A DNA stretch of 64,000 bases from Mytilus californianus (taxonomy: Eukaryota): NCBI RefSeq assembly GCF_021869535.1, contig NW_026262668.1, forward strand, positions 109,678,001 through 109,742,000, read 5' to 3'. How positions within the stretch are numbered: position 1 is the stretch's first letter; each line of letters starts with the position of its first letter. Both the position numbers and the translations under genes were made by a program. A model generated the notes under the pieces. It was not told where the DNA came from. It made no database searches and worked only from the letters and a program-made list of their open reading frames with translations. Positions 15,686 to 57,349 of this stretch are shown here, in pieces.

Positions 15686-18185
15686 TTAAGTTTTAAACTG
15701 AAATTTTTTTTTAAGGTTTTCACAATTGTCAATTTATTCTTTATCTAGTAATCGTAACTAGTCTTGCTCGTGGTTAAAGTGTTCCGGTATTCTGTATACA
15801 ACTATCATTCTTATCTCGAAAAAAGCTCGAGTGTACTTTGTTATTATTTTTATTATCATTTGGTCAAATCAAACAGATTCATGCCTCAATCCGTATGAAA
15901 AAAAGAAGATGTGATATTATTGCAAAGAAGACAACTTTCAACCAGATACTGAATGACGTGCATGGATTCATTTTAAAACTAATAGAAATCCATGAATATC
16001 AGTTTTTTTATTTGGCGTTGATTGTAACGCTATAAGTGTATGTAAGCTGCGTCCATTTAAGTAATGTATTATCTATAACTATAATTAACATACAAGATCA
16101 ATTATTTTCGTCTATATATAATAAGAGATGTGGTATGATTGCCAATGAGACAACTCTCCACAATGTTTGCTTTCTTTAAAGTGAAATGAAATGTGAACTA
16201 TTTCTCATGGATATGTTATATTAACCTGTGAAAATGTTTTAAGAGTTTTCAAAAAGTTTGCTTAGTTGCAAAAAGTACGATATAAACATATAGGTTTCAA
16301 AAAGACGAGCAAGAGGAATACTGCAATAAACGTCAATGTGACAGCTACCTAACAATGATGAAATTAGTATTATATTCTTCAACTACACTCTGCTCACTGT
16401 CACTTTCGTCCATGGCATGTGAGATAAATGCTGCATCTTTAAGAGAAGCTCCTCAATTCTGGACTCCATGTGTGATGTCCAGATAATGTCTTGTATACCC
16501 TAGATACCAGAGTCTATAGGCAATGTGCGCAAATTAACATGTTTTCGTCCGGAATATGCATCTAACTTGCCACTGGACATTAAACAGTCATCCATCATCA
16601 TGAGACAAACAACTAGTAAAATGTTGTGTTTCTTTGATATTCATATTTTTTTTTCTTTTTTCCCAAAAAGTGAAATAATAGACGCGTAAATATCTTCTCT
16701 AAAGATTTTAATATCTTTAATCATTTATTTAATTATGTTTAAAGTCATTATTGTACTGTAACTTTGGAGAGATATGATTGAAAGTTGTTTGACGAACGTC
16801 CAGTGGCAAATACTTCGTTGCATTTTTATGACGGAGAGCAATTTAGAGAATCTTTTTCAAACAGGAATCAAGAAATTGCATGTGTTGTCATTGAACATAA
16901 GAGAAAATTCTCCAAAAAAGGGGGGGGGGATAAAGAATCATAAGACCAATAAAATCATACAACACCATGAACATATAGAGGCGACAAAAAAAAAACAGCA
17001 ATAAAAAAATATAAAAACAGGTAACTACAGATTGAACACGAACTTCGGGCTACCACAAGAAACGACAATCAGAAATATAAATATATCTCATAGATAATTT
17101 TTTCATAGTAAGCAGCCATTTTTGTTGGTCGCTTGTTACATAGTCTCACTTAAATTTAAAAGAGACCACCAAAAAGGGACCAAATAAACAATTGCTACTT
17201 GTATGCATTCTGATCAATTATGCACGCTATCCCGCGTGCATATCAGATATTTATTTGAATGTATCCAAGCTATATGATTGTGTCGGATAGTTTTGTTTCA
17301 TCTTTATTTCAGTTTTCATTGAAAACAAATATTTTTTCTGGTTGAATGTCACGGACAGTATACACCATGCCCTCTCATGGCGTCGTAATTTTTATTTTAA
17401 TTAAAGAAATAATAAAGAGCTTATTTAACCACTGTGCAATATGATATCAAAATTCTCACGTGGTTTCTTCTTATGTCCTACGATTTTCTATGTATGTTAT
17501 TGTTCATAGTTCTGTTACCTATTTACACCATCCGTAGCAATTATTTAAAATGTTAACTTGGCATGCCATATACATGATAGAAAATGCGGACGTGAAAGAA
17601 AGCACTTCATCAACATGAGATTACATTCCGTATAGGTTACATTACGACGATTTTGTCTTTAAAAAACAAAATACGTGTATCTAAAAGGAAATTTGTATTA
17701 ATTTTTATGTTGACACCCATATCGATCTGCTGGATGTAGAATTTTACGGAAAAAAAACTACGGCTCTATTTTGAAACTGTCATAATTTTGTTTGCATAGC
17801 ACAGACCGGGCGACCGGGCTAACTATTACAAAATAACGTTGAAATGAACTTTAAAATAATTTGCAAATTATTAATTTTTATTTCCAAAAAATTGTCTTGT
17901 TTTCTAATAAAAAAACAGTAATTAGGGCGTATCTATCCGTGTTTAAAAACCTCGCCGGATCGGCGGTTAACGATGCTTCGCTAAAAACAAATTTAAAGAC
18001 TTGTTTTTCCATTTTCTTCTTTTTTGTTTGTCATAAATAAGAAATTAATAAATCATAGAAATTATTCTATTTAAAGCAATTGTACAAGTTCTTGGTACAG
18101 TTATTTCGTCACAGAATCTATCGTACCTCGGAAATGGCGGCGTTGAATCAGGATTTGCTTCTTAGCAAAAGTTAAATTTTCGATG

Positions 18186-33227: not shown

Positions 33228-36200
33228 ATGGCTGTCAATGTATTGTTTCAACCACCTATTGTAAGGAGAGAGCGACATTTTCGTGGATTTGACCCTCTTG
33301 AAAGGAAATTTTCTGATGAGGAGCTAAGGCAGAGGTATAGATTTGGCAGAGAGACCATTGAGTACTTGTCTGATTTAATGAGAGGGGATCTGGAGCGTGG
33401 GACAAATAAGGAGACAGCCCTTTCAGTGGAACAACAGGTTATGATTGCCTTGAGGTTTTATGGCAGTGGATCTCATTTGCAAGTTGTTGGGGACACAATG
33501 GGATTTGACAAATCAACTGTGTCTCGGGTGATCGACCGTGTGACGGAGTTATTAGTTGCCAGGAAGGACGAGTTCATATTGTGGCCAGATAACCAGAGGA
33601 AGAACGTAATAAGGGCTGGGTTTTATGAAAAGGCTGGGTTTCCAAACGTGGTTGGATGCATTGATGGGACCCACATAAAGATTACTGGGCCTAGCATTGA
33701 TGAACCAGCATTTGTTAACAGAAAGGGGTTCCACAGCATCAACGTACAAGCCATTTGTGACCATGAAGGTAATTTAAAACACTATATTCTACCTATTTTA
33801 TGTTTACAACATGCATTGTGTGCGTCCTTTTTCTTGACATATTCAATCGGCAGATTCCATATAAGAATTTCTGACATAAGATTTGACAGACTTTATTTTT
33901 TCTGACATAAGATTTGACAGACTTTATTTTTTCTGACATAAGATTTTGACAGACTTTATTATTTCTGATATAAGATTTGACAGACTTTATTTTTTCTGAC
34001 ATAAGATTTGACAGACTTTATTATTTCTGACATAAGATTTGACAGACAAATTGAGTTTCTGACATAAGATTTTGACAGACTTGATTCTGACATAAGATTT
34101 TTCATACATAAGATATTTTGACAGACAATATATATTTGTTTTTTTTTGACTGACATTGGAAATCAAATCCTAGTTGAAAGTCATCTTTAAAACTCCTGGA
34201 AAATACTGTAGCCTAACATCTAACAAGATTTCACTACAGGTCAAAGAACTTTAACTGTTAGCACATTCAAATGTTTCAGACATAAGAAAACAAGTTTGAC
34301 AGATCTTATGTAGGAAACATATAAGTTAAAACTATTGCTTGAATAAAGTTAAATGAAAGAATCAACATGTGTTTTTTCTTATGCACTTACAGTTTTAACT
34401 GGCATATATTGGAACCTACAATGATTTTGAAAGTTTTTACAGCGATATTCCTGACATAAGATTTATTGACAGACACTGAGCTATAAAGCAAAATATTTGA
34501 AAGTGAAAAAAAATATATATCACAGATGTTTTTGACTAAAAAAAGTAACAAATTTGGGAACAGGGATGTTTGAATAACCAGACTACACTAGTAAATACCA
34601 GTATACAAGTGTCAACATAAAGCATTGCAACACATAAACATTGTTTAAAAAAATTGGAGTTAATTCTGTCAAAATGTTTGCATTTTTTCAACTTGTTTTA
34701 ATCATTTCTACTTTAAACGGAAACAATCATATCCAAAAATTATTTTTATAATTTCTTTTAACATCATTATTCCTCAAAACATTCACAGATTATCTTTAAA
34801 ATAACAGTAATTATTATTTTTATTTATTTATTCATTTTGACAGACATTTCAATTTCTTATATGGAATCTGCCAATCGTCCTTGACCATATACAATATTGG
34901 CTGGTTTTCTGTTGAACTGGTTTTCAGCTAATTTGAAAATTGATGGAAAAAGATAGACAACTCAATCATGTCATATACTTTTTATTGGATCCGTAAAATC
35001 AATGCGTTTACCGTTTCACTTTCAAATATGATGGATCGAGTGAACTGCTAAGTGTTTATGATCGTTTATGCTTAATACATAAATTTATTGATCAAAATAG
35101 TTTTAAAGATGTGCCCATCCACCCCTATCTGCTTCAGGTAGAATTTGGTCAGGCTTAAACTTTGAAACGACAACGTAAATAGTGTGCCTCACGTAGATTG
35201 CAGAAATTCTGGAATCTACCTCTAAATGTTTCTGTGTCAGAGGAGACAGAAATCACTCCCCCCCCCCAAAAAAAAAAAACACCACCAAACATAATAATTG
35301 TCCAATCATCAAAATATTTCGCCCCCCCCCCCCCCATTCCTTCCGGTTGGGAAATAGTGACCAATCCCCAAGCCAGTCATTGTTCAATACATTTAAAAAA
35401 AAAGGGAGCATAACTTCTGTGCAATGTATTGTTTATCTGAATTGTTACTATACATATTTTGTTTTCACCACATTGCAAATTCGGCCAATATTTTAATGAC
35501 TGGAACTATAATGGACAAACTATGCATGCATAAAAAAGAAGATGTGGTATTATTGCTAATGAGACAACTCTCCACCAGAGATTAAATGACACAGAAATAA
35601 ACAGCTATGGGTCACCATACTTTATTCACAATCACTGCCTTGCTTTGCATTGACAAATGAATTATCACGGAACCTACTTTTTCCCCTTTTTTAATTATCA
35701 TAATTTTGTTTAAAGGTAGATTCACCAACATCAGCGCTAGGTGGCCAGGATCAGCACATGATTCTCATGTTTTCAGAACCTCAGCCATAGGACAACATCT
35801 TGAGAATGGATATCAAGGAATTGGACAAGGTGTATTGTTAGGAGACAGTGGCTATCCCTGCAGACAGTTTTTGCTGACACCATACAGACAACCAGCTGCT
35901 GGTAGAGGTCAAGCAAGGTTTAACAGAAGACATTGCTCAACAAGGTCAACAATAGAAAGGACATTTGGAATATGGAAGAAGCGCTTTCACATTCTAGGAT
36001 CAGAGGTAAAATTAATTCTTTACAAATAATCATAGTAGTAATATGAATATTTGACATAGTGTTTGCCCTTATATTTTAAAAGTTATGTTGTTTTTTTCTT
36101 GTGAGAGCTGTCTACTTAATCTTTCATTAGTACATTTTTTCTATTTCTCTAAATTTTGGTTTAGGTATTCATAATTGTCCCCTTCTATGTCAGGGCCTTT

Positions 36201-38255: not shown

Positions 38256-41156
38256 TCAAAACATAGAGGCAAGTGCCTTGGAGAGTGTGACCGGTTCTGA
38301 ATTGCCACCCACTAACTTCTGCAAAAGCTCAATTTGGAGTTCCAGTTTTTTCTTTTGTAGGTCCATTTGAATGTTCTTCTTCTCTTGTATCACTAATTTA
38401 CCCTGCAGTGCACGATACTGTGTGTCATGTATGTCCTGCACTGTTATCTTTTTTGAGGGTGTTCTCACTATCCTACAAATAAAAAAAACATAATGATTTT
38501 TTTTTAAAAGATTGAATAATTTTACAACTCTTTTTATTGATCGATACCCAGGCATAATTCCACCAAATAGCTACTTACAACTCGGGGGGCCACTTTCTAT
38601 ATACAAAGTGATTGAACGACGTGCCGTTGGAATATGTCATGTTTTCCGGCTTGAAATATGTGAATAGGTGGGGAAAACTATCAGAAATATATGAAAAGGT
38701 AAAAAAAGTTCCAATTACTTGTATACTAAAAAGCCCTGTTTGAGACTGTCATTTTTCACATCCTAAAAAGTCTCGCCGTAAGTTGAATTAACATTACATA
38801 CAGAATCTTAGCCCTTATTTCATTGGCGGATCCAGAAATTTTCACAAGAGGGGGCCCACTCCAGTCATGCTTCAGTGATTCTCTATATAATCAACCAAAT
38901 TTTTCCCACAAAAGGGGGAAGGGGTGGGGGCGCTAGCCCCCTGGGCCCACCCACTAAATCTGCCTCTGAAATAACCACACGAAACACAACAAATATGAGA
39001 AAAGGTTACATTATTAACTACGCAATATAGGAAAAGGACTATACATTTTTAATATCTTAATTGTATTAATAGGGTGGGGTCACACTAGAACCCCAGCGGC
39101 ACCCCTATCAATCAAGTATTGATCCCACCACCACCACCACCATACCCGATGCTTACTTAGGTGCTGAAATGACTAAAACTTGAATACATTTAAAGTTATT
39201 ATAAGGAAATATATCACTATACCATAAAGTTCTATCCTTAGCAGAATTTGTCAATAATTTTTAGGTTTAGGTTTGAAAGATTGTCACGTTTAGTGATATT
39301 AATGACTGCATTGTCATGAAGAACCGATAGCAAAATCTCACTTTGAGGTTCATTGTTGGAAATATAAACATGCATTGACAAATTTAATTTTATACATTGT
39401 ATCAAGAAAAAAGTGTTGACCAAATAAACTAACGGAACCTGTTTACACAACACATTTTTAAAGAGTTCTTGTTGCAGGCAAGGATTTGTATAGTAGCATA
39501 TCTTACTATACAAATCCTTGTTGAAGGCCTTACTTTTAATTTCAGTGTCATTTTGGTCTCTTGTGGAGAGTTGTCTCATTGGCAATCATAACATATCTTC
39601 TTTTTTATATTTATTTTAAACTTACTTCCACTTTTCTGTAATACTTGTTTGTACTGGAACAACTGTTTGTGTTAGGATAGGGTCATATCCAGTCAGCAGA
39701 GATGGACTCTGTGGACTGAGAGGGGGTGGACTGTCACTGATAAGTGATGCTGCCGACTCATAGAGATCCTGGCTGGCATCTTCTTCTGGTAATGTGGCAG
39801 TGATAGTTAGTGGATCTGTAATAAATGAGAGAAAATTGACTTGTTGATACTGTGTTTGGGTATTTTATCTATCTGTTTATAGGGGGTCGGGACAATGGAA
39901 ACATATCATCATACATTAAATTCAGATACAATGTACTTTAAATTGCAAGTAAAAAAAAATTGCACAAGACTAAATAAGACCCTATTTCAACCCTTTAAAT
40001 ATTATTATGGGTCTCAGCTATAAACTATGTGTTCCTGTCTAGGTTCAGACTGCAACAACAAATAGATAAACTTTATTCCGGATTTAAGATAACCAGTCCG
40101 TATGTGTTTTAGTATTATAAATCATAACTGGTTTTTGCTCCAAATTATCTACTGTGGTTCCTTTTAATCTAACAACAGATACCAGTTTGGAGACGACTTG
40201 GCGGGCACCTGCCACTTGTGAACAAATGTTGAAAATAACACTTTAAAACCGTTATCAGTTTAAACAAATGCAATCTTGCAATAGTAAAACAAGAGCAGAA
40301 CCTTCAAACCAACAAGAAACACGTTGGCAATCATTTAAGTAATAGAAAATTGGTCAAAACAAATTGTTTTCAGTCACGTGATATCAGTTGGGAATTCCCC
40401 TACTTGTTGTGACGGCGGAGCAGACGAAACTTTTACAAAAATTGAATAAGGGAAACTATGTATCCCGGGATTAAAAAGGCTACGAATATGTGTGTTATTT
40501 TCATCGAATTTCATTAAAAATTAACAATAACAATAAAAAAAAACACCTTCAAAACAAAATTTTGCCAAAAATTGTTTGTTTATGAAAATTAAAAACATTT
40601 AGTTGATTGAAACTGTTAAAGTTCACTTTTTTACAAGGTGCAATAAAAAGGGTAGAGCCCTGAGAAGTTCTAATTAAGGGAAAAAAAACATTTGGGGATA
40701 TATTCTTATGTGCTAAAAATTATTTACATACTTGTCTGGAATGACCCTGTTTCAAGTCCACCCTGAATCCCTGTGAAGCTGGTGGTGTCCTTCATCAGGT
40801 GGATAACCCTCTCCACTGCTGTGCTGGGTTGCTTTGGAGCTGGTCCTCCCCCAGTTTTGAGTATTTCATTCCTGTGTTTTGAATAAACGGCCTTGGCCAC
40901 TCTTGTGGTGTTCCTCCATTTGTTTCGTACTTCTGTTGAAGTACGAAGAGCAACTCCAAGAGAATTTACCTTGATGGTAATCTCATCCGAAATGTCTTTT
41001 CTTTAACTTATTTGTTACTGTGTTTGTTAATTTTCCATTTATGATGTTGGAGTTTTTTTCCACAAGCTGTGGTATCAAGTCTTCTTCTGCCACAGTAAAA
41101 TTGGTCTTCTTTAGCCTTTTCAGTTTGCTTGGGGTTTGTTCAACTGGTTCAGCCAT
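38256..41156 (-). pseudogene. Harbinger Myb/SANT-like partner gene, 3 exons (41156-40732, 39815-39626, 38472-38256), with one +1 frameshift
   Basis: KKTNFT..E..L..LV..VTNKLKK / EI..VNSLGVA.RT..EVRNKWRN..KTGGG. Phases 1 and 2 match. Exon 1 is 425 nt where 424 is needed (extra A near 40997-41000); 276 aa if repaired. C-terminal coiled coil. Confidence 0.85.
38821..38967. mobile_element. Short decayed MITE (GGCGGATCCAG-type TIR) in a Myb-gene intron
   Basis: GGCGGATCCAG ... CTAAATCTGCC, imperfect inverted ends. Confidence 0.45.
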
Positions 41157-42367
41157 TTTTTTTACAGACAGGAAGCTCATAAACAATGAATGGTGGGTAG
41201 GTTTTATTTAATCACTTGATTAATCAGTTGATTAAATTTTAACGCATTGATTAATCAGTTGATTAAATTTTAATTCATTGATTATTTAATCAACGCGTTA
41301 AATATTGTTGAACAACAGAAAATAAACGACTCGTTAAAAAATTTAACGACTCGTTAAATTTAATCAATCGTTAAAATAACGACAAGATGAACAACAGAGC
41401 CCAGTTGTTTACAATTTGGACATTGTTGAATAATTATCTCATTGGAAAGTCATTCCACATTTCTTTTTTTTCATATAATATCAAATTAGTTTATAGTTTA
41501 TCTGTCGACATTTATTTCTGATAGACGAGTTGGTATATTAAAAGTTATATTTTTGCACAATGTTTATCGTATACGTTGTACGGATGATTATGATGTAACG
41601 TCAAATATCGTTTAGCCTAAGTTGAGGCATTCACCGGTATTTGGTAGGCATGATACGTTTCCACAATGTACATACAGAGATTTTAAATGTTGACACTCAG
41701 ATTTAAAAAAAAAGAAAACACTCACCGACAGACTAAGATCCCCCCCCCCAAAAAAAAAAAATAAATACATAGACCTCAATATAGAAGATCACTTCGTTAA
41801 CTCAGAAGACGACAATAACCTTCTACCTTATAAATACTCTTCCACATGATCTGGTATAATATAAACTGAAAAGTAATTGAAAAAGTAAAATAACAAAAAT
41901 ACCAAACTCCAAGGGAAATTCAAATTCTCAAACACATTAAACGAATGGAAAACAACTGCCATATTCCTGACTTGGTATAGGCATTTCCTTATGTAGAAAA
42001 TGGTGGATTAAACCTGGTTTTATAGCTAGCTAAATCTCTCACTTGTATGACATTCGCATATAATTCCATTATATTGACAACAATGTATGAGCAAAACAAA
42101 CAGACTTGATTTTGGGGCCCTTTATAGCTTGCTGTACGGTGTGAGCCAAGGCTCCGTGTTGAAGGCCGTCATTTGACCTATAATTGTTAACTTTTTATAC
42201 ATTGTGGCTTGGATTGAGAGTTGTCTCTTTGGCACTCATACCACATCTTATTTATAATAAAAGGTAAAAATGTCAAAAATTGGGGTATAGCAGTCAACAT
42301 AGTAATATAATCTTAATCACTATAAAACAAATGAATGGGCGTTAAAAGTTGAACTTCATCTTTGAAG

Positions 42368-43802: not shown

Positions 43803-44483
43803 AGTATTTGACCTACAATGGCTATTTCAGTCATAGTTTTTGAGAAAATAGATATGAGCCTAGGCCTTACCAAAAAGAAGATTTTACACATATTACTATC
43901 TTTGTACAATATATCTTGTACTTAAATATATTTTTAACCATGGCTCCTATGTAAATATTAATGACGATCTCAAAATAAATTATTACAGTTTTGTACTAAA
44001 TGCAAGAAGTTTGAAGCCTTAATGCAAATATGCAAGACGAAATTCAAAATTGTCGTTATCTTATTTTCATGCTTTCTACTTTCAAATAAAAATACAATAA
44101 TAAGTTTTTGTAATGCGCAAAATTCTGTTTATTTCATATCTAATGTGTAAAAGCGATGAACTTTTCAGATTACTCTTTTTTTATTTTTTTTTTTTTCAGA
44201 TTGTACATGTGTTATAGATACATAAATTACCGGTATCTTATCCCGGTCTCTTAAACTTTAGTATTATATACAGATCATTTTCATGGTTATAACATGATTG
44301 TACACAATATACAATTTACACAATAGTTAGGTTGATAAATATCCTATTCTAGTTTTCTTACAATTTATAGAAAGGAACATTTATGTTTTGTATATTTTGA
44401 GTCAGTTTGTTAAAATGAAAAAAATAAAGAAAATAAAAAAAAATTAATTAATTAAAAACCATAGATTTAATGAATTCTGTATA

Positions 44484-45556
44484 ATGAACATTCCCTTGTC
44501 ACCATCTTACGGTGTTTATATATCTCAACTTGTACGATTCGCTCGTGTATGTAACAATGTTTTAGATTTTAAAGAGAGAAATTTATGTATTACTGAAAAA
44601 TTATTACACCAGGGTTTTCGATATCACAAACTAGTCAAAACATTTACTAAATTTTATCATCGGTATAAGGACATCATTCGTAAATATAGCTCAACATGCA
44701 GACTTCTTATACGTTCAGGTATTTCACATCCAATTTTTTATGGAAATATTCTTTATAAAGCACAAAAATGTCAGTATTCACCTCTGAAACTAACAAAACC
44801 TTTAAATAGACTTATTAAGAAGGGATATAGTTACGATACTGTTGTCAGGTCATTAAAGATTGCATATTTTGGCGTTAATATTGATTCACTTATAGGGTCT
44901 TTGCATCGGCACTAAACACATTTATTTAAAAACCAGTTGTTGGCATGACACGGGTTATGTTCTTCTCATATATGTTATGATGGTATGATACTAAACCCCT
45001 AACGGGAAGGATTGTGCCTGTTATTCATATGATGAAGACATAATCTTTCAATCAGTTTAATTGAAGTCTGGAGCTGGCATGTCAGTTAACTGCTAGTAGT
45101 CTGTTGTTATTTATGTATTATTGTCATTTTGTTTATTTTCTTTGGTTACATCTTCTGACATCAGACTCGGACTTCTCTTGAACTGAATTTTAATGTGCGT
45201 ATTGTTATGCGTTTACTTTTCTACATTGGCTAGAGGTATAGGGGGAGGGTTGAGATCTCATAAACATGTTTAACCCCGCCGCATTTTTGCGCCTGTCCCA
45301 AGTCAGGAGCCTCTAGCCTTTGTTAGTCTTGTATTATTTTTAATTTTAGTTTCTTGTGTACAATTTGGAGTTTAGTATGGCGTTCATTATCACTGAACTA
45401 GTATATATATTTGTTTAGGGGCCAGTTGAAGGACGCCTCCGGGTGCGGGAATTTCTCGCTGCATTGAAGACCTGTTGGTGACCTTCTGCTGTTGTCTGTT
45501 CTATGGTCGGGTTGTTGTCTCTTTGACACATTCCCCATTCCCATTCTCAATTTTAT
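44484..45556 (+). mobile_element. 5'-truncated Naiad-type Penelope-like element (RT C-terminus plus 3' UTR)
   Basis: PSYGVYISQLVRFAR..ITEKLLHQGFRYHKLVKTFTKFYHRY is clearly homologous to 53768-54187. Followed by a SECIS-like hairpin and a tail ending ...ccattctcaattttatt. Confidence 0.85.
44955..45043 (+). promoter_or_regulatory. SECIS-like element (type II), 3' core strand mutated
   Basis: A-TGAT (44977-44981); helix II GGTATGAT / ATTGTGCC; unpaired TAAA; mini-helix CCC/GGG; helix I ttatgttcttctcatat / atatgatgaagacataa. The 3' core reads TGTT, not TGAT. Confidence 0.7.
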
Positions 45557-50480: not shown

Positions 50481-51294
50481 GAATGTTCTGGATTACGACA
50501 ATGTTTTAATACCTCGAAAAAAACACATTATACCAAAATTGATAATACATTCAAAGGATCATTTTACTTTTACTCTCCTTTACTTTGCTACGGACACCAC
50601 GTCAAATATATCTTAATTAAAAACCGTGTATTTGCATGTATTGGTTTGGTTCGTCGTTGGTTTTGATAAAAAAAAAATTGACCCACATGAAATTTTCCGA
50701 TATACGACACTCATAGTTTTTTTTAAATTTCGAGTTGAATCAACCTGTGAGTCATTAGCAAACTATAAAAAATAACGCATGCTGAAAAATATTCGTTCCA
50801 GTATGAAATGAAGACTAACATATTAAAGATTTCTAAACTTTCATTTGTGCTTTTCAGATTTATCTGGTAGGGTGTAATGTAAAGCCAGTGAAGTGTATGA
50901 TTTTCAAGACAGTGGTAATGATTAAAGTTAGTGCACCTTACGAGAATGCAACGCGTAAAGATACTTTTCAATTGAGGCTGAAAATAGTAGTCTCTTTAAT
51001 TCCTACAATTACGGAAAAAGACGTTTCCCCAAAAGACGTGACAACTGAACATCTTGACGAAATTAATGGAGTCTGCCAAATACCAGTGAACACACCTAAT
51101 ATATTATTGTTGTCATTAAAATACTGTTTGACTTATAGATGTTCCACATTAGTTGATTGTATATCTGCTTTTATATGGGATGTCACGAATGACTTCGACC
51201 CTGCAACGCCAAGACGTAAACATCATGAAGCGCATAAAGAGTCCAAGCTAGGTATTTATTTATAGGATTGCTAGAATTGATTAAATTTTTGTTG

Positions 51295-54187
51295 ATGGCG
51301 AAAGGTGATCTTTAACATTGTTTAGATAAGTGACTAACCTGTTTCAGATTAACTTCACAAAATACTGTAAGGTCAACAGTGAACGGGAGAGCTTTTTCGC
51401 TCTCCTTTTTCTGTGACATTACCTGAAAAACTCAAAACCTTTTATATGTGGTAGCTTGAACCCAACCTTAGTGTGGTATTCAATATGTGGGACAGACGGG
51501 ACGAGAGTATTACAGAAGAAATCAAGAACACCTTTACCGCTTTCGGAGACATCAAAAATTCAAATGTTTGATATATCAACATTTAGATAAGCATAATCAC
51601 AATCTAAAATTTATAAAATTCCAACCACTTGAAACCGTTCAGAAACAAACAGGAGAATCACACAAGCACAAGCAATTGAAAAATCACGTAAAGTTCGCGA
51701 ATTATTTTGGATAAAAAGACTTCAAACAGCTTATCCTCTCGGTCTTTATGACAAAATATTAGGACAGGGGAACATAACTAAAACTTCAATCGATGTCATT
51801 AATATTGTCGATAAACGACTTAGAAATAAAAGGTCTCATGGCAAACGCAAGAACCGTAATCAACGTATTAAACATCGTATAAATTATACACTTGCTGATC
51901 TGTTATCTATAATAAAAAATAATTGCAGACATCAAGTATTATGCAAACTGGGTCAGATACCAATAAGTAAATTATATGCTATTTTTCTGGAGTGTGATAA
52001 AATTTCTTTTTTTATCATAATGTATGAATACACCCGTATTATTACAGCCTTTTATCATCATAGGCTATTTCCTAGTATCGATAAACCTGAAAATCATAAA
52101 CCGCATTTTTCTTAAATTAAAATATATAAATAGAGGTATTGATTTTATTAACTTATCTAGTATATTCAATGACTCGACCATCCAAAGACAAATACCTCCA
52201 TATTTTGATAATATAGAACCACCTATTATTTCGTATTCTTTAAAAAAAATCCAGCAGAGGTTTGATTTTTAATTATACGTCAGTTACATCATTCGTCAAT
52301 ATAGAAAATAATGTTCCTTCCACTTGAGACTGTGAAACAGCTAGTTTTAGATATGTTTCCTATGGTCATGTCCTTACAGGAGACCTCAACATTGACCGTA
52401 AGGTCATAACTTTTCTTAAGAAAGGACCGAAATATCGTCCTCCATCTAAAATAGATTGGAAACAGTGTCGTCAGGTCATTAAAGACGCCCTGTCTGTCTA
52501 CTGTAAAAATTGGTGTAAACGTGAAAAATCTGATTAAAAAATTTCTAGACAGTTAATTGAATAAAATTATGAATAATGTTAATATTCGTATATCTCATTT
52601 TGAAAACAATTCTGAAATTAGTAATAGGGTCAATGATATTCCCATTTCTAAAATAAAAAATAAACTCTAAGTACTCGCAAAGCGGTTTGTGTTCGTACCG
52701 GCAGACAAATCAGCAAATAATGTAGTGGTGGTGTGACGCATATACTACACGGAAGTTCTTCAAAACGAAATTACAAATTCTTCTACATTCAGGTCCGTAC
52801 GCTCCACAGAGAGTCAAATTGTAAACAAGCATATCACTGCCACTACCCAGCTTACAGCCTCTCCCGAACATTTGAAAGTCCCTACTATATACTGGTTACT
52901 TAAATTGCACAAAAACCCATTTAAATTCCGTTTCATCTCCGCATCTAGTAAGTGTTCTACTACCAATCTATCAGTGCTTCTAACTACCTCCCTTACTACT
53001 ATCAAAGAACTTGCTATTAACTTTTGTAATAGAGCTTATGAAAATAATGGTATTAATTATTTTTGGAGTGTTAAAAATTCTTTAGAGGTTTTAGATAAAA
53101 TACATGCTTTTGGTGGTCCTTTTAGTTCTGTTGACTGTTATGATTTTTCTACTCTCTAAACTACACTTTCACACAATCTTATCAAGAAAAAGTTTTCATA
53201 TTTAATTAAATGGTCTTTTGAAAAATCTCATTACAAATTTATTTACTGTAACTCGTTTAAAGCCTTTTTCTGTAACGAAAAAGGAAAGTATGCTAGATAC
53301 ACTTACTGGAAATGTGAAGATATGACTGAAGCTTTAAATTTTCTCCTGGACAACATATATGTACGTTTCAGCGATAAAGTGTATCGACAAGTAGGAGGTA
53401 TTCCTATGGGAACTAACTGCGCCCCTTTAATAGCAGATTTATTCCTGTATTGCTATGAATCTCAGTTTATGACCAAACTCAGTCAAGACACGTCATTGTT
53501 ACATTTGGTAGATACATTTAACAATACCTTCCGTTATCTGGATGATATTTTTTCGTTAAATAATCCAGAGTTCTCTAAATATACTACCGAAATTTACCCA
53601 AAAGAACTTACTTTAACTAAATCAAACATAAAACAGCAGTGGTTATCCTTTTCTAGATTTGGATATTTCAATCTCTAAAGGAAAACTTCATACTAAAATT
53701 TACGACAAAAGAGACGACTTTTCATTCCCTATCGTTAATTTTCCCTTTTTTAGACGGCGATGTTCCTTTGGCTCCATCATACGGTGTTTATATATCCCAA
53801 CTCGTTCGTTATGCCCGTGAGTGTAGTGATGTCATAGATTTTAACGAACGTAATCAATGCATCACTGGTAAATTATTAAGTCAGGGATTTCGTTACCATA
53901 AATTACGTAAAACTTTTACTAAATTCTTTCATAGATACAAAGATTTGATTAGTAAATTTGGCTGTACCTGTAGAAAACTGATTAAAAACGGTATTTCACA
54001 TCCTAAATTTTACGGTAATATTGTACTTAAAGCGCGGAAATCACTATGTGATCCGTGTAAACTCATCGAACCTTTAAACAAACTTATTAGTAAAGGTTAT
54101 CTTACCAATGTTGTAATAAGATCTTTGAATATAGTTTACATTGGCACTAATATCGATTTTGTCATCAGCAAATTAAAACATAACTAA
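51295..54187 (+). pseudogene. GIY-YIG + reverse transcriptase polyprotein with five in-frame TGA (predicted Sec) codons; this copy also has TAA/TAG stops and frameshifts
   Basis: MAKGDL*HCLDK(U)LTC; IT(U)KTQNLLYVVA(U)TQP*CGIQYVGQTGR; RELFWIKRLQTAYPLGL; RSHGKR; PST(U)DC..GHVLTGDL..KGPKYR; ADKSANNVVVV(U)RIYY; YWLLKLHKNP; DFSTL; GIPMGTNCAP; FRYLDD. Confidence 0.9.
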
Positions 54188-54310
54188 ATTTGTATCCTTT
54201 TTAAACGGGATGTATAAAGACACACCCTCGTTCATTTTGATCTATAAAGAGGTTAACCCCTAACTATCCTACTGCCTGTCGATACATTTATTTTTGGCAT
54301 TGCAAAAGTC

Positions 54311-54387
54311 GTGTCTTCTTTGACAATCCATGACGTTAAAATACTAAATCCCTGGGATGTGTTTTAGTTGATTTTAGTCTCTGATGC
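54311..54387 (+). promoter_or_regulatory. SECIS element (type II) in the Naiad 3' UTR
   Basis: A-TGAC (54330-54334) / TGAT (54369-54372) non-canonical quartet; 10-bp helix II GTTAAAATAC / GTGTTTTAGT; unpaired AAA; mini-helix TCC-CTG-GGA. Core lies about 140 nt after the stop codon. Confidence 0.88.
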
Positions 54388-57349
54388 ATGATTTTTTTTA
54401 TTATTAATTGTTTTTGGCTTTTAACTAGCTGTCAGTAAATGCGAGTACTCTCAAATCGTACTTTCTTGTTTATTTGACCTGTTGATATACTAATTGTAAT
54501 GTTTTTTTGTGATTTAATGTTTACTTATTCAGGATTTTATCTGGTCTATATACCAGCTTTGATAAGTGTTTGGTATTACTATAAATTTTCACTTCTTCGT
54601 ACTATGAACATCAAAATTATTTATTTTGTAAAAATATTTCCTTTCTCCATTTGAACTGTACACGTATACCTAACAACAAAATTATTTTCATTTACCTGTG
54701 TTTAAAGTATTTGCAAATGGCTGATATTTTTGTTTTTCTTGAAATTATTTAACATTTCACAGCGGTATAACATGTTACTTTAATTATTCTTCCCTTAGTT
54801 TATTTATTTTGTATTTACATTGTATCATAGATCAAATTTATTTGTTCAGTGTAAGTTCACTGGTGTTAATATGTCTTTTGATTGAGTTAAGCCATTTCAA
54901 TTGATATTCTATAGTGTCTCTTTCTATGTTGTGATGTTACATTATAGTTTCAGATAAGGGTGAATGTTTGGTACCATTAAAACGTTTAAACCCGCTGCAA
55001 TTGTTTGCACCTGTCCTAAGTCAGGAATCTGATGTTCAGTAGTTATCGTTTGTTGATGTGGTTCATAAGTGTTTCTCGTTTCTCGTTTTTTATATAGATT
55101 AGACCGTTGGTTTTCCCGTTTGAATGGTTTTACACTAGTAATTTTTGGGGCCCTTTATAGCTTGCTGTTCGGTGTAAGCCAAGGCTCCGTGTTGAAGACC
55201 GTACTTTGACCTCTAATGGTTTACACTTATAAATTTTGACTTGGATGGAGAGTTGTCTCATTGGCACTCATACCACATCTTCTTATATCTATATTCTATT
55301 TGTTAGTTGTATTGGCCTTAAAATGGTATTCAGTTACTGCGATTACTCGAAGATCGGTGCTTGGCGTCTCTTATCTTTTTGTTATTTTTTTTTTTTTTTG
55401 TGTTTTATGCCGAACTGATGAGTCAAACCCTTTTCAAGTGATTTATACAGTTTGGTCTTATTATTAGTTCTGTTACACCACTGTCCGGGGTTAGGGGGGA
55501 TACTTAAACACTCGCAGACATGTTTAAACTCGACACATTCTGTATGTGCTTGTCCCAAGTCAGGAGCCATTTATTCAGTGATTAATGTTGATTGCTGTCT
55601 GTCATTTTTGTTGGTGTTTTTCGTTTATTGTTTTATCCTAAATCAAGTCGGTCGTTAGTTTTCTCGTTTTTGTTTGTTACACGGATTTGTCTCTTCTAAA
55701 TCGATGTACAAGATTTAAAAGTCGCCTTAATTTACAATTTTTCATTTAGTCCTCTAACCAAGTATAAAGTTGTTTCTTTGGTGCGCACGTATTTTCCCAA
55801 ATTAAATTATATTTGAAAATTAATGTAAAACAAGGAAAATCAAGTAATCTAAAAAATATACAAAAATCGTCATGTTGTTGTCATAGTAATTCGTTAAACG
55901 TGAAATTTATTTTTATTTTCTGAACACCTTGTACCTAAGTGTAGTTAGGACAAATTTAAGAATAATATTTGAGCCATCATAAGGGCCTTATTGTCGCTAC
56001 TCCTTTAATGACAAGTTTATTGACACATTGACAGGATCAATAAGTCAGCTAAACCATGTGATCATTATTACCTTAATGCTACCAATGAGGATCAAACCGG
56101 TATATAACTAGAGTAAATGATAATGATAAAGAAAAGACCAAACAAACTTTTCACCATCGAATGACTAGTTCCTTAATGGACCCATACCTTTACCATGGTA
56201 ATAATGATTTCAAAGTTTAGCCAACAGCTTATTCAACCCAATTTTAAAAAGTAAGGACATTCTAAGTTGAATATAATTCTAAAGGTAAACAATGATTTGA
56301 TACAGACGGATCTTCTCAGCTGTGTGTTGAACGCACAAATGCGTGCTCACAATATATAATCAAAAAGGGAGTCTGAAATATGCAGCAAAAATTGCAGGAT
56401 TGCAGTTTGCCTTTTAGTTTCCCCCTTCCGCCAAAATTTTCAAATCAAATGGATGCCGACTTAGCGATTAAAGATATTTCTAATCGACCTTTTTATGAGC
56501 CGATAGGAGCCGGCCCATCATATGATATGAGTTTGAATGGTGTACAGGATTTACTGCGATCTTAAAGTGAGTGCGTTTTTAGAGAAGTTTCTATTGCTGA
56601 AAGAAAACTGATTTGGATTTAGAAAAGTAATTCTACTACTGATAGCATTTTTGTATTTCATTTATCATTTGAACTGTTAAAAAATAAAAATAAAAAACTT
56701 TACTGTGCCTTTATTGATTTTGTAAAGGCCTTTCACACTGTTTGGCATGTTAAGACTTTGGTAAGATAATCAGTGAATGGTAAAATGTATGATACTATTA
56801 CAAATATGTATAAAATAATGTATAGAAATGAATTTTCAGATTTCCCCCCATGTAATGTTGGTAGTAGACAATGGGGAAAATTTATCTCCTATACTTTTTT
56901 CTCTATATATAAATGATTTAGAAGATTTACTAACAGACAAACATATATATGGTTTGAAAACTTTCGAATGATAAGGTTAGTAAGTAAGTAGATTATTTAT
57001 GACAGTGATTTGTGTAATTACAATAATGTGTCAATTAACATAATTTAAAATAATATATACATATACACATCCGACCCAATGGGTCTATAAGTCACCTAGA
57101 TATTAAAGTTCATATTCGATTTGTGTCACGGATTTGATAAAAAGCATCAATAATCGATTAATATAATGAATAAATAAGTTTTAGATAATAAATTATTAAA
57201 CTTGTCCAAATACAACTTGACGTCGTTTCTTTATGGCGTACACCATATATTTAGCAGTTTTTCGTGGAAAATTGATTAACACATGGTAAATTTTTTCGTC
57301 ATTGCTCATTTCAAGTAGTCGACATCTGATATAAAATCTTCGAAATGTT

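What the first reader, a model, noticed from the sequence alone, without database searches (positions are those of the whole stretch)
51295..52736. Retrotransposon polyprotein whose five in-frame TGA codons all sit on cysteine-motif positions (selenoprotein retroelement)
Seen: in the reconstructed frame, TGA occurs at 51331 (C-L-D-K-U-L-T-C), 51424 (T-U-K-T-Q-N) and 51457 (V-A-U-T-Q-P-x-C-G-I-Q-Y-V-G) in the GIY-YIG region, at 52325 (U-D-C before GHVLTGDL), and at 52734 (DKSANNVVVV-U). I found no other in-frame TGA; the decay stops (TAA/TAG) fall at non-motif positions. Established: Naiad/Chlamys Penelope-like elements have an N-terminal GIY-YIG, and Sec-encoding Naiads with SECIS were reported by Craig et al. 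2021 (Mol Biol Evol), so the class is known. Inference: this family makes a multi-Sec endonuclease/RT with Sec in metal-binding motifs, so its mobility could depend on host selenium. The ORF track hides it by chopping it at each TGA.
Basis: partly seen in the sequence, partly recalled or inferred. Interest (0 to 1): 0.92.

Follow-up and report, generated by a model that had tools for sequence, protein, structure and literature searches.

The report
Dead copy of selenocysteine-coding Naiad retrotransposon
This is a broken, 5'-truncated copy of a high-copy mollusc Penelope-like (Naiad) retrotransposon whose five in-frame UGA codons were inherited from its source element, replace conserved cysteines and are very probably read as selenocysteine; the class was published in 2021, but five such codons, two at new positions, exceeds the three or four reported.

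Summary
Window 51328-55291 (+) is a decayed copy, 5'-truncated by about 586 nt, of a roughly 4.55 kb Naiad-type Penelope-like element (N-terminal GIY-YIG endonuclease plus reverse transcriptase).

- **The TGAs are inherited.** All five are shared by sibling copies: 13/13, 13/14, 12/13, 29/29 and 29/29. The window's four TAA/TAG stops and five of its six frameshifting insertions are private; the sixth lies in a variable A-run.
- **No other family-wide stops.** No in-frame TAA/TAG is shared across the family ORF.
- **They replace conserved cysteines.** Against 45 full-length Cys-type Naiad proteins, the five TGAs fall on 5 of only 8 conserved-Cys columns among 893.
- **Supporting features.** A SECIS_1 match lies 133 nt after the stop codon and recurs at the same place in siblings. 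The RT downstream of all the TGAs has dN/dS of 0.10-0.20. The genome has tRNA-Sec. Strand-biased RNA reads cover the ORF.

The class is known (Craig et al. 2021, clams and spiders, 3-4 UGA). This family has five and adds the second Cys of CX2-5CxxC and the first Cys of CxC. Its SECIS position fits neither published clam family.

The parts
51328..55291 (+). 5'-truncated, decayed copy of a ~4.55 kb Naiad-type Penelope-like element; about 586 nt of the 5' end is missing
   Evidence: Siblings are 91-96% identical from 51328 to ~55292. Longer siblings share a further ~586 nt upstream. Flanks differ in every copy after the 3' terminus.
51331..51333 (+). TGA 1: second Cys position of the CX2-5CxxC motif (family reads C-x4-U-x2-C)
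   Evidence: TGA in 13/13 copies that reach it. Cys in 23/25 homologs. Family context.
51424..51426 (+). TGA 2: the Cys preceding the GIY-YIG motif
   Evidence: TGA in 13/14 copies. Cys in 30/30 homologs. A published Sec site.
51457..51459 (+). TGA 3: first Cys of the CCHH motif inside the GIY-YIG core (U-x4-C-GIQ-YVG)
   Evidence: TGA in 12 of 13 copies with bases there. Cys in 32/33 homologs. The published clam Sec site.
51433..51760 (+). GIY-YIG endonuclease core (LIY...YVGQT...R...EH...ELFWI...GLN), broken in this copy by TAG 51469 and a 5-nt insertion at 51669-51673
   Evidence: The sibling EN piece aligns to the PF01541-positive N-terminus of P0023 at E 1e-26. Defects.
51810..51878 (+). 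KR-rich linker (putative nuclear localisation block)
   Evidence: Translation. The feature is described for Naiads.
52240..52252 (+). Variable A/C homopolymer run; the 9-nt form keeps EN and RT in one frame, the 10-nt form (this copy and 17/30 copies) puts RT in the +1 frame
52325..52333 (+). TGA 4 = first Cys of the diagnostic CxC motif (U-D-C)
   Evidence: TGA in 29/29 copies and in the 89% relative L032. Cys in 41/42 homologs. Not among the published Sec sites.
52704..52736 (+). DKA-type motif (here D-K-S) followed 8 residues later by TGA 5 (52734-52736)
   Evidence: TGA in 29/29 copies, in L032 and in the 54%-identity family L036. Cys in 43/44 homologs. A published Sec site.
52737..54187 (+). 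Reverse transcriptase part of the ORF (YLDD at 53535-53546) ending at TAA 54185. In this copy it is broken by TAA 53157 and 1-nt insertions at 53630 and 53743
   Evidence: phmmer found 25,975 homologs, the best at E 1e-138. The 482-codon segment is open in 6 of ~30 siblings. dN/dS is 0.10-0.20.
54320..54381 (+). SECIS element in the 3' UTR, 133 nt after the stop (AUGA core, ~10-bp helix, unpaired AAA, mini-stem, UGAU); two private substitutions at 54325-54326 weaken helix I in this copy
   Evidence: Rfam SECIS_1 scores 32 bits, E 0.0016. The same place in siblings scores 29.8-33.6 bits, and 37.8 in one, against a gathering score of 35. Folds are; private substitutions.
54188..55291 (+). 3' UTR and 3' terminal region; the last ~350 nt are vastly over-represented in the genome

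Best explanation
The window holds a dead copy of a selenoprotein-encoding Naiad retrotransposon family. The source element carries one long ORF: CX4UxxC knuckle, GIY-YIG endonuclease, KR-rich linker, UxC motif, DKS motif, then reverse transcriptase. In that ORF, five conserved cysteine codons have become UGA. A SECIS hairpin in the 3' UTR of the same transcript recruits the host's Sec machinery (tRNA-Sec, SBP2, eEFSec). The ribosome then inserts selenocysteine at each UGA and reaches the RT. Copies such as this one inherit the five TGAs and the SECIS on insertion and afterwards decay neutrally. Shown here: inheritance of the TGAs, their alignment to Cys, the SECIS-like hairpin, purifying selection downstream of the TGAs, host tRNA-Sec and transcription. 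Inferred: actual Sec insertion, any catalytic or metal-binding benefit, and selenium dependence of mobility.
For: The five TGAs are fixed in siblings (13/13, 13/14, 12/13, 29/29, 29/29). All four TAA/TAG stops in the window are private (0 of 15-29 copies). In family coordinates, no TAA/TAG is held by a majority of copies in frame from the 5' region to TAA 54185, whereas the off-frames carry dozens. The five TGAs occupy 5 of the 8 conserved-Cys columns among 893. SECIS_1 scores 32 bits, E 0.0016, on the coding strand in the 3' UTR, and recurs at the same place in 10 of 11 siblings scanned at the E-value threshold (L012 gave no hit) and, at 37.8 bits, in L018. Over the 482 codons downstream of all TGAs, dN/dS is 0.10-0.13 against an 89% relative that keeps TGA 4, TGA 5 and the SECIS, and 0.15-0.20 against a 91% sibling. 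The genome has two tRNA-Sec genes at 79.6 and 77 bits, against a cut-off of 47. Raw RNA reads cover the whole ORF and SECIS at 18-60x, with up to ~100-fold strand bias over most of the ORF. A 54%-identity family (L036) also has TGA at DKA+8 and its own SECIS.
Against: There is no direct evidence of Sec insertion. The SECIS scores below Rfam's gathering threshold in the window and in most siblings (30-34 against 35), and its folding energy is no better than shuffles in the window copy (z = -0.11). None of the 13 long siblings is fully open. About half of the copies, including the one that dominates the RNA reads, carry the 10-nt A/C run, which puts the RT out of frame with the EN. The RNA reads carry variants absent from the DNA contigs, so they may come from one locus, possibly read-through from a host gene. 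Their strand convention was not calibrated.
Confidence: 0.88

Rival explanations
1. The UGAs are read through, but not as selenocysteine. Near-cognate or Cys insertion, or general leaky termination, would produce the full protein, and the SECIS-like hairpin would be incidental.
For: The SECIS is below Rfam's curated threshold in most copies and thermodynamically unremarkable. No chemical evidence for Se exists.
Against: The TGAs are exclusively at conserved Cys columns, which is what Cys-to-Sec replacement predicts and leaky termination does not. A SECIS is present at the same place in 10 of 11 scanned siblings and in L018, and a sequence-unrelated one is present in a second family with the same UGA site. 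The host has tRNA-Sec. Five consecutive leaky stops would yield almost no RT, yet the RT is under strong constraint.
Confidence: 0.05
2. The TGAs are true stops. The family would be a non-autonomous or dead lineage that amplified using RT/EN supplied in trans by the Cys-type Naiads that coexist in the genome.
For: Intact ~1000-aa Cys-type Naiad ORFs exist in the same genome. No sampled copy of this family is fully open.
Against: A lineage not needing its own protein would accumulate TAA/TAG and frameshifts at the family level. None is shared apart from the homopolymer run. dN/dS of 0.10-0.20 downstream of all five TGAs shows selection on the encoded RT. All five stops being TGA, and all at Cys columns, is unexplained by this model.
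Confidence: 0.05
3. Chance or artefact: the TGAs are private mutations or assembly errors of this copy.
For: None found.
Against: The TGAs are shared by up to 29 independent insertions on many contigs and by a contig from another data set.
Confidence: 0.01

Closest known systems
[quoted passage not shown] 2021, PMC8557442)
   Same: Both are Naiad PLEs of a bivalve-type host. UGA occurs at the Cys before GIY-YIG, at the first Cys of CCHH and at the Cys 8 aa after DKA. A SECIS lies 3' of the ORF.
   Different: This family has five UGAs, not three or four. The extra UGAs are at the second Cys of CX2-5CxxC and the first Cys of CxC. There is no UGA in RT6(D). The SECIS lies 133 nt after the stop, rather than 1-21 nt after it or overlapping it. 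By its MFE fold the hairpin has a mini-stem (form-2-like), whereas the paper calls its SECIS elements type I. Sequence identity could not be measured because the supplement is not held.
Naiad_Sdum (spider Stegodyphus dumicola; four UGA)
   Same: Has UGA at the second Cys of the CX2-5CxxC motif, as here, plus the pre-GIY-YIG and DKA+8 sites.
   Different: The host is an arthropod and the origin is judged independent. The first Cys of CX2-5CxxC is also UGA there but is Cys here. There is no CCHH or CxC UGA.
Cys-type Naiads (e.g. Penelope-2_CGi; P0003, P0023; intact ~1000-aa copies in this genome)
   Same: Same domain order and motifs. The RT is 35-45% identical, and the EN aligns at E 1e-24 to 1e-26.
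   Different: They have Cys at all five columns, no in-frame UGA, and no SECIS was detected in L033.
Selenoprotein P (multi-UGA host selenoprotein, up to 132 UGA in molluscs; Baclaocos et al. 2019, as cited)
   Same: One mRNA with several UGAs decoded processively through a 3' UTR SECIS. It shows that mollusc ribosomes can do this.
   Different: It is an unrelated host gene, with Sec used for selenium transport, and it typically has two SECIS elements. Here one SECIS was found.

Membership tests
Naiad clade of Penelope-like elements | N-terminal GIY-YIG endonuclease upstream of the RT in one ORF | tested here: met
   The EN piece matches the PF01541-positive N-terminus of P0023 at E 1e-26. The RT lies downstream. 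One frame is kept in the 9-nt A/C-run class.
Naiad clade of Penelope-like elements | CX2-5CxxC motif upstream of GIY-YIG, and CCHH motif inside the core | tested here: met
   C-NAKK-U-LT-C, and U-x4-C followed by His residues, with U at conserved Cys columns.
Naiad clade of Penelope-like elements | KR-rich linker, CxC motif, DKA-type motif with Cys 8 aa downstream | tested here: met
   KR block at 51810-51878. U-D-C at 52325. D-K-S (a variant of DKA) plus U at +8.
Naiad clade of Penelope-like elements | IFD insertion between RT3(A) and RT4(B) | tested here: inconclusive
   About 90 residues separate DFSTLY and GIPMG by eye. They were not compared quantitatively with canonical PLEs.
Naiad clade of Penelope-like elements | No canonical hammerhead ribozyme; 5' truncation, head-to-tail partial tandems (pLTR) and a 30-40 nt tail | tested here: met
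   Rfam finds no hammerhead inside the element. 5' ends are staggered. The 3' end abuts the 5' end in L004, L012 and L014, and L005 has a ~32-nt tail.
Eukaryotic selenoprotein gene | In-frame UGA aligned to Cys (or Sec) in homologs | tested here: met
   Five of five: 23/25, 30/30, 32/33, 41/42 and 43/44 Cys.
Eukaryotic selenoprotein gene | SECIS element in the 3' UTR on the coding strand | tested here: met
   SECIS_1 at 54320-54381 scores 32 bits, E 0.0016. It scores 37.8 bits (over the gathering score of 35) in one sibling and 29.8-33.6 in ten others. AUGA, AAA and GA cores are present. The score is borderline. SECISearch3 was not available.
Eukaryotic selenoprotein gene | Coding constraint continues downstream of the UGA | tested here: met
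   dN/dS is 0.10-0.20 over 482 codons after the last UGA, and 0.19-0.46 between UGAs.
Eukaryotic selenoprotein gene | Host has Sec decoding machinery | tested here: met
   Two tRNA-Sec hits at 79.6 and 77 bits, cut-off 47. SBP2 and eEFSec were not searched.
Eukaryotic selenoprotein gene | Selenocysteine is actually incorporated | not testable with these tools
   Needs 75Se labelling, mass spectrometry or ribosome profiling.
Published clam families Naiad_Mmer / Naiad_Scon | Three or four in-frame UGAs at the published positions | tested here: not met
   Five family-fixed UGAs. Three are at the published clam positions and two are additional. None is in RT6(D).
Published clam families Naiad_Mmer / Naiad_Scon | SECIS 1-21 nt after the stop (Scon) or overlapping it (Mmer) | tested here: not met
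   The SECIS starts 133 nt after TAA 54185.
Published clam families Naiad_Mmer / Naiad_Scon | Sequence identity to the published consensus | not testable with these tools
   The supplementary sequences are not held, and organism names are coded.

The most novel reading that the evidence does not exclude
This is a Naiad lineage distinct from the four published Sec families. It carries five selenocysteine codons, the most reported for a transposon protein. In each of the three Cys-pair motifs the N-terminal partner has become Sec (U-x2-C, U-x4-C, U-x-C), and so have two single conserved Cys. That pattern would point to stepwise Cys-to-Sec conversion once a transposon owns a SECIS. It may also extend Sec-Naiads to a bivalve group beyond the two clams; an unverified lead from another reader says mussel. 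Thousands of 5'-truncated copies would scatter SECIS elements through the genome.
Probability: 0.6. Interest if true: 0.55.

Novelty: new member of a known kind. Interest (0 to 1): 0.45.

Why it matters
Selenoprotein-encoding transposons are known from a single paper and four families. A fifth family would strengthen that picture in three ways. It has more Sec codons, two of them at positions not reported before in bivalves (one not reported at all). It shows clear purifying selection downstream of the UGAs. It is also transcribed. Together these suggest that the switch to Sec is adaptive and progressive in these elements.

There is also a practical point for annotation. ORF-based transposon and gene callers chop these elements at every TGA: all database relatives above about 46% identity are fragments whose homologous part begins after the last UGA. 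The thousands of dispersed SECIS copies are a plausible source of new host selenoproteins.

For this window itself the copy is dead and has no function of its own.

Tried and rejected
- **Pfam on the window's own ORF pieces** gave only sub-threshold hits (RVT_1 at E 0.023). Domain identity was taken from homolog alignments instead.
- **Apparent EN-to-RT frameshift.** The first family-column analysis suggested a fixed +1 frame change between EN and RT. It traces to a hypervariable A/C run where 9-nt (in-frame) and 10-nt forms are about equally common. Programmed frameshifting or transcriptional slippage there is not excluded, but it is not needed.
- **Size of the 5' truncation.** My first estimate (307 nt) was wrong because the comparison copy was itself truncated. 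It is corrected to about 586 nt.
- **SECIS folding energy** is not better than shuffles in the window copy, so it is not used as support.
- **Published consensus sequences** could not be compared because no supplement is held.
- **Organism names** are coded, so the host is given only as a mollusc, probably a bivalve.
- **A sixth Sec codon** was looked for upstream of 51328 in longer copies; none is shared.
Per-column tallies and real-copy translations with X at TGA were used instead.

Full report
**What is in the window.** Three-frame translation of 51150-54300 shows a Penelope-like element with a Naiad layout. A cysteine knuckle and a GIY-YIG core (LLY...CGIQYVGQTGR...EH...ELFWI...GL) come first. 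They are followed by a KR-rich block, a U-D-C motif, D-K-S-ANNVVVV-U, and a reverse transcriptase with YLDD that ends at TAA 54185.

**Boundaries and copy number.**
- A search of the window's own 1.65 Gb genome gave 7,862 first-look candidates; the 40 scored were mostly 91-96% identical.
- All long alignments start exactly at 51328 and end at about 55292, with unrelated flanks beyond the 3' end.
- Comparing siblings with each other shows the family continues about 586 nt upstream of 51328. 5' ends are staggered across copies at about -590, -496, -307, -252, -142, -96, -77, -53, 0 and +10.
- In three copies the 5' end abuts the 3' end of an upstream partial copy, and a fourth carries only a ~32-nt tail. 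These are the pLTR and tail structures described for PLEs.
- The window therefore holds a copy truncated by about 586 nt from a ~4.55 kb unit.

**Are the TGAs inherited or private?**
- In a 30-copy alignment, the five columns are TGA in 13/13, 13/14, 12/13, 29/29 and 29/29 copies that have bases there.
- In the family's frame, the window's other in-frame stops (TAG 51469; TAA 52554, 52668, 53157) are shared by no other copy.
- Its insertions at 51669-51673, 52106, 52534, 53630 and 53743 and a 6-nt deletion after 52393 are likewise private. Raw reads confirm the insertions independently.
- Across family columns, no TAA or TAG is held by a majority of copies in the coding frame from the 5' region to TAA 54185. 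The two other frames carry dozens.
- The only family-level irregularity is an A/C homopolymer run at 52240-52252. It is 9 nt in about 13 copies (one continuous ORF) and 10 nt in 17 copies including the window (RT in the +1 frame). The paper notes that this adenine-rich region is prone to frameshift mutations in Naiads.

**Do they sit on cysteines?**
- An exhaustive phmmer search with an intact 482-aa RT segment of a sibling found 25,975 homologs.
- I aligned 45 full-length hits with two real-copy translations carrying X at TGA. Several of these hits have a Pfam GIY-YIG domain N-terminal to the RT.
- The five columns are Cys in 23/25, 30/30, 32/33, 41/42 and 43/44 homologs.
- Only 8 of 893 well-populated columns are conserved Cys. 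Five are TGA here and the other three remain Cys.

**Recoding apparatus.**
- Rfam finds SECIS_1 at 54320-54381 on the coding strand (32 bits, E 0.0016), 133 nt after the stop.
- The same hit recurs at the same place in 10 of 11 siblings scanned at the E-value threshold, at 29.8-33.6 bits. In a separate scan of 20 siblings at the gathering threshold of 35, only L018 passed, at 37.8 bits.
- The fold shows helix I, the AUGA/UGAU quartet, a ~10-bp helix II, unpaired AAA and a mini-stem. The window copy has two private changes that weaken helix I.
- The genome has two tRNA-Sec genes well above the cut-off.

**Is the protein downstream of the UGAs needed?** Over the 482 RT codons after the last TGA, dN/dS is 0.10-0.13 against an 89%-identical contig from another data set. 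That contig keeps TGA 4, TGA 5 and the SECIS. Against a 91% sibling the value is 0.15-0.20. Between the TGAs it is 0.19-0.46. These values include neutral post-insertion decay, so they are conservative.

**Expression.** Raw RNA reads of a run labelled with the same organism as the best DNA holders cover the ORF and SECIS at 18-60x. The strand bias reaches about 100-fold over most of the ORF and weakens to 2- to 7-fold around 53057-53189 and beyond 53855. It corresponds to sense RNA under the usual dUTP convention, which I did not calibrate. The reads carry variants that the DNA contigs lack, so one or a few loci dominate. RNA runs labelled "mollusc metagenome" also hold the element.

**Relatives.**
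- A 54%-identity family on a metagenome contig has D-K-A-SNNVIFV-U. It has its own GC-rich SECIS overlapping the end of the ORF.
- Every database representative more than about 46% identical to this RT is a fragment whose homologous part begins after the DKA+8 position. That is what chopping at a TGA would produce.
- Cys-type Naiads with intact ~1000-aa ORFs coexist in the same genome.

**Comparison with the literature.** Craig et al. 2021 described Sec-encoding Naiads in two clams and two spiders, with three or four UGAs. The sites were the Cys before GIY-YIG, DKA+8, the first CCHH Cys (clams), the first or second CX2-5CxxC Cys (spiders) and one RT6(D) site. The SECIS lay 1-21 nt after the stop or overlapped it. 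This family shares the three clam sites. It adds the second CX2-5CxxC Cys and the first Cys of CxC, lacks the RT6(D) site, and has its SECIS 133 nt downstream. No later paper on Sec-encoding PLEs was found. I therefore file it as a new member of a known kind.

**Context within this scan.** Other readers and one follow-up agent had already flagged Sec-type Naiads elsewhere in this genome, including a four-UGA family.

**Age.** Mean pairwise K2P distance in the RT region is 0.032, and 0.042 for the window copy against the others. None of the 13 long siblings is fully open.

Noticed in passing
window 54900-55291; also 414-761, 1527-1572, 16113-16160, 35536-35574, 39564-39616, 42110-42252: The last ~100-350 nt of the element are enormously over-represented: DNA word depth is up to 5.6 million, against about 12,000 at the 5' end, and RNA covers both strands. 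Short fragments recur six times in this window. The cause is either extreme 5' truncation or a SINE-like parasite sharing the Naiad 3' tail.
   Followed up: partly
window 44475-44900 (+): A heavily 5'-truncated fragment of a second, divergent Naiad family (RT C-terminus only; 44-46% aa identity to database relatives, ~70% nt identity to this element). It does not reach any Sec column.
   Followed up: partly
window 52240-52252 and the same place in L002-L030: The A/C homopolymer between EN and RT splits copies about evenly into in-frame (9 nt) and +1 (10 nt) forms. The locus that dominates the raw RNA reads has the 10-nt form, while one RNA-library contig has the 9-nt form. Transcriptional slippage or ribosomal frameshifting on the A-run is not excluded.
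   Followed up: partly
L036:1700-1765 and L036:2-232: A 54%-identity Sec-type Naiad on a metagenome contig has a GC-rich SECIS (29 bits) of unrelated sequence. The TGA inside the SECIS AUGA core is itself in frame at the end of the ORF, which recalls the published description of Naiad_Mmer.
   Followed up: partly
G000:C154:27755505-27807263: At least 50 identical tRNA-like sequences, mostly spaced 728 bp apart in tandem, each hitting the tRNA-Sec model at 42.8 bits (below the cut-off). This is probably a tandem array of a long-variable-arm tRNA gene.
   Followed up: no
window 51385, 51433, 51622, 51628, 52022: All raw RNA reads of run X23 differ from the window at these places, with letters absent or nearly absent from the DNA contigs of the same organism label. 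Expression seems to come from one or a few particular loci.
   Followed up: no
window 50888-51265 (+): A 125-aa ORF lies immediately upstream of the truncated 5' junction, in the flank. It was not examined.
   Followed up: no
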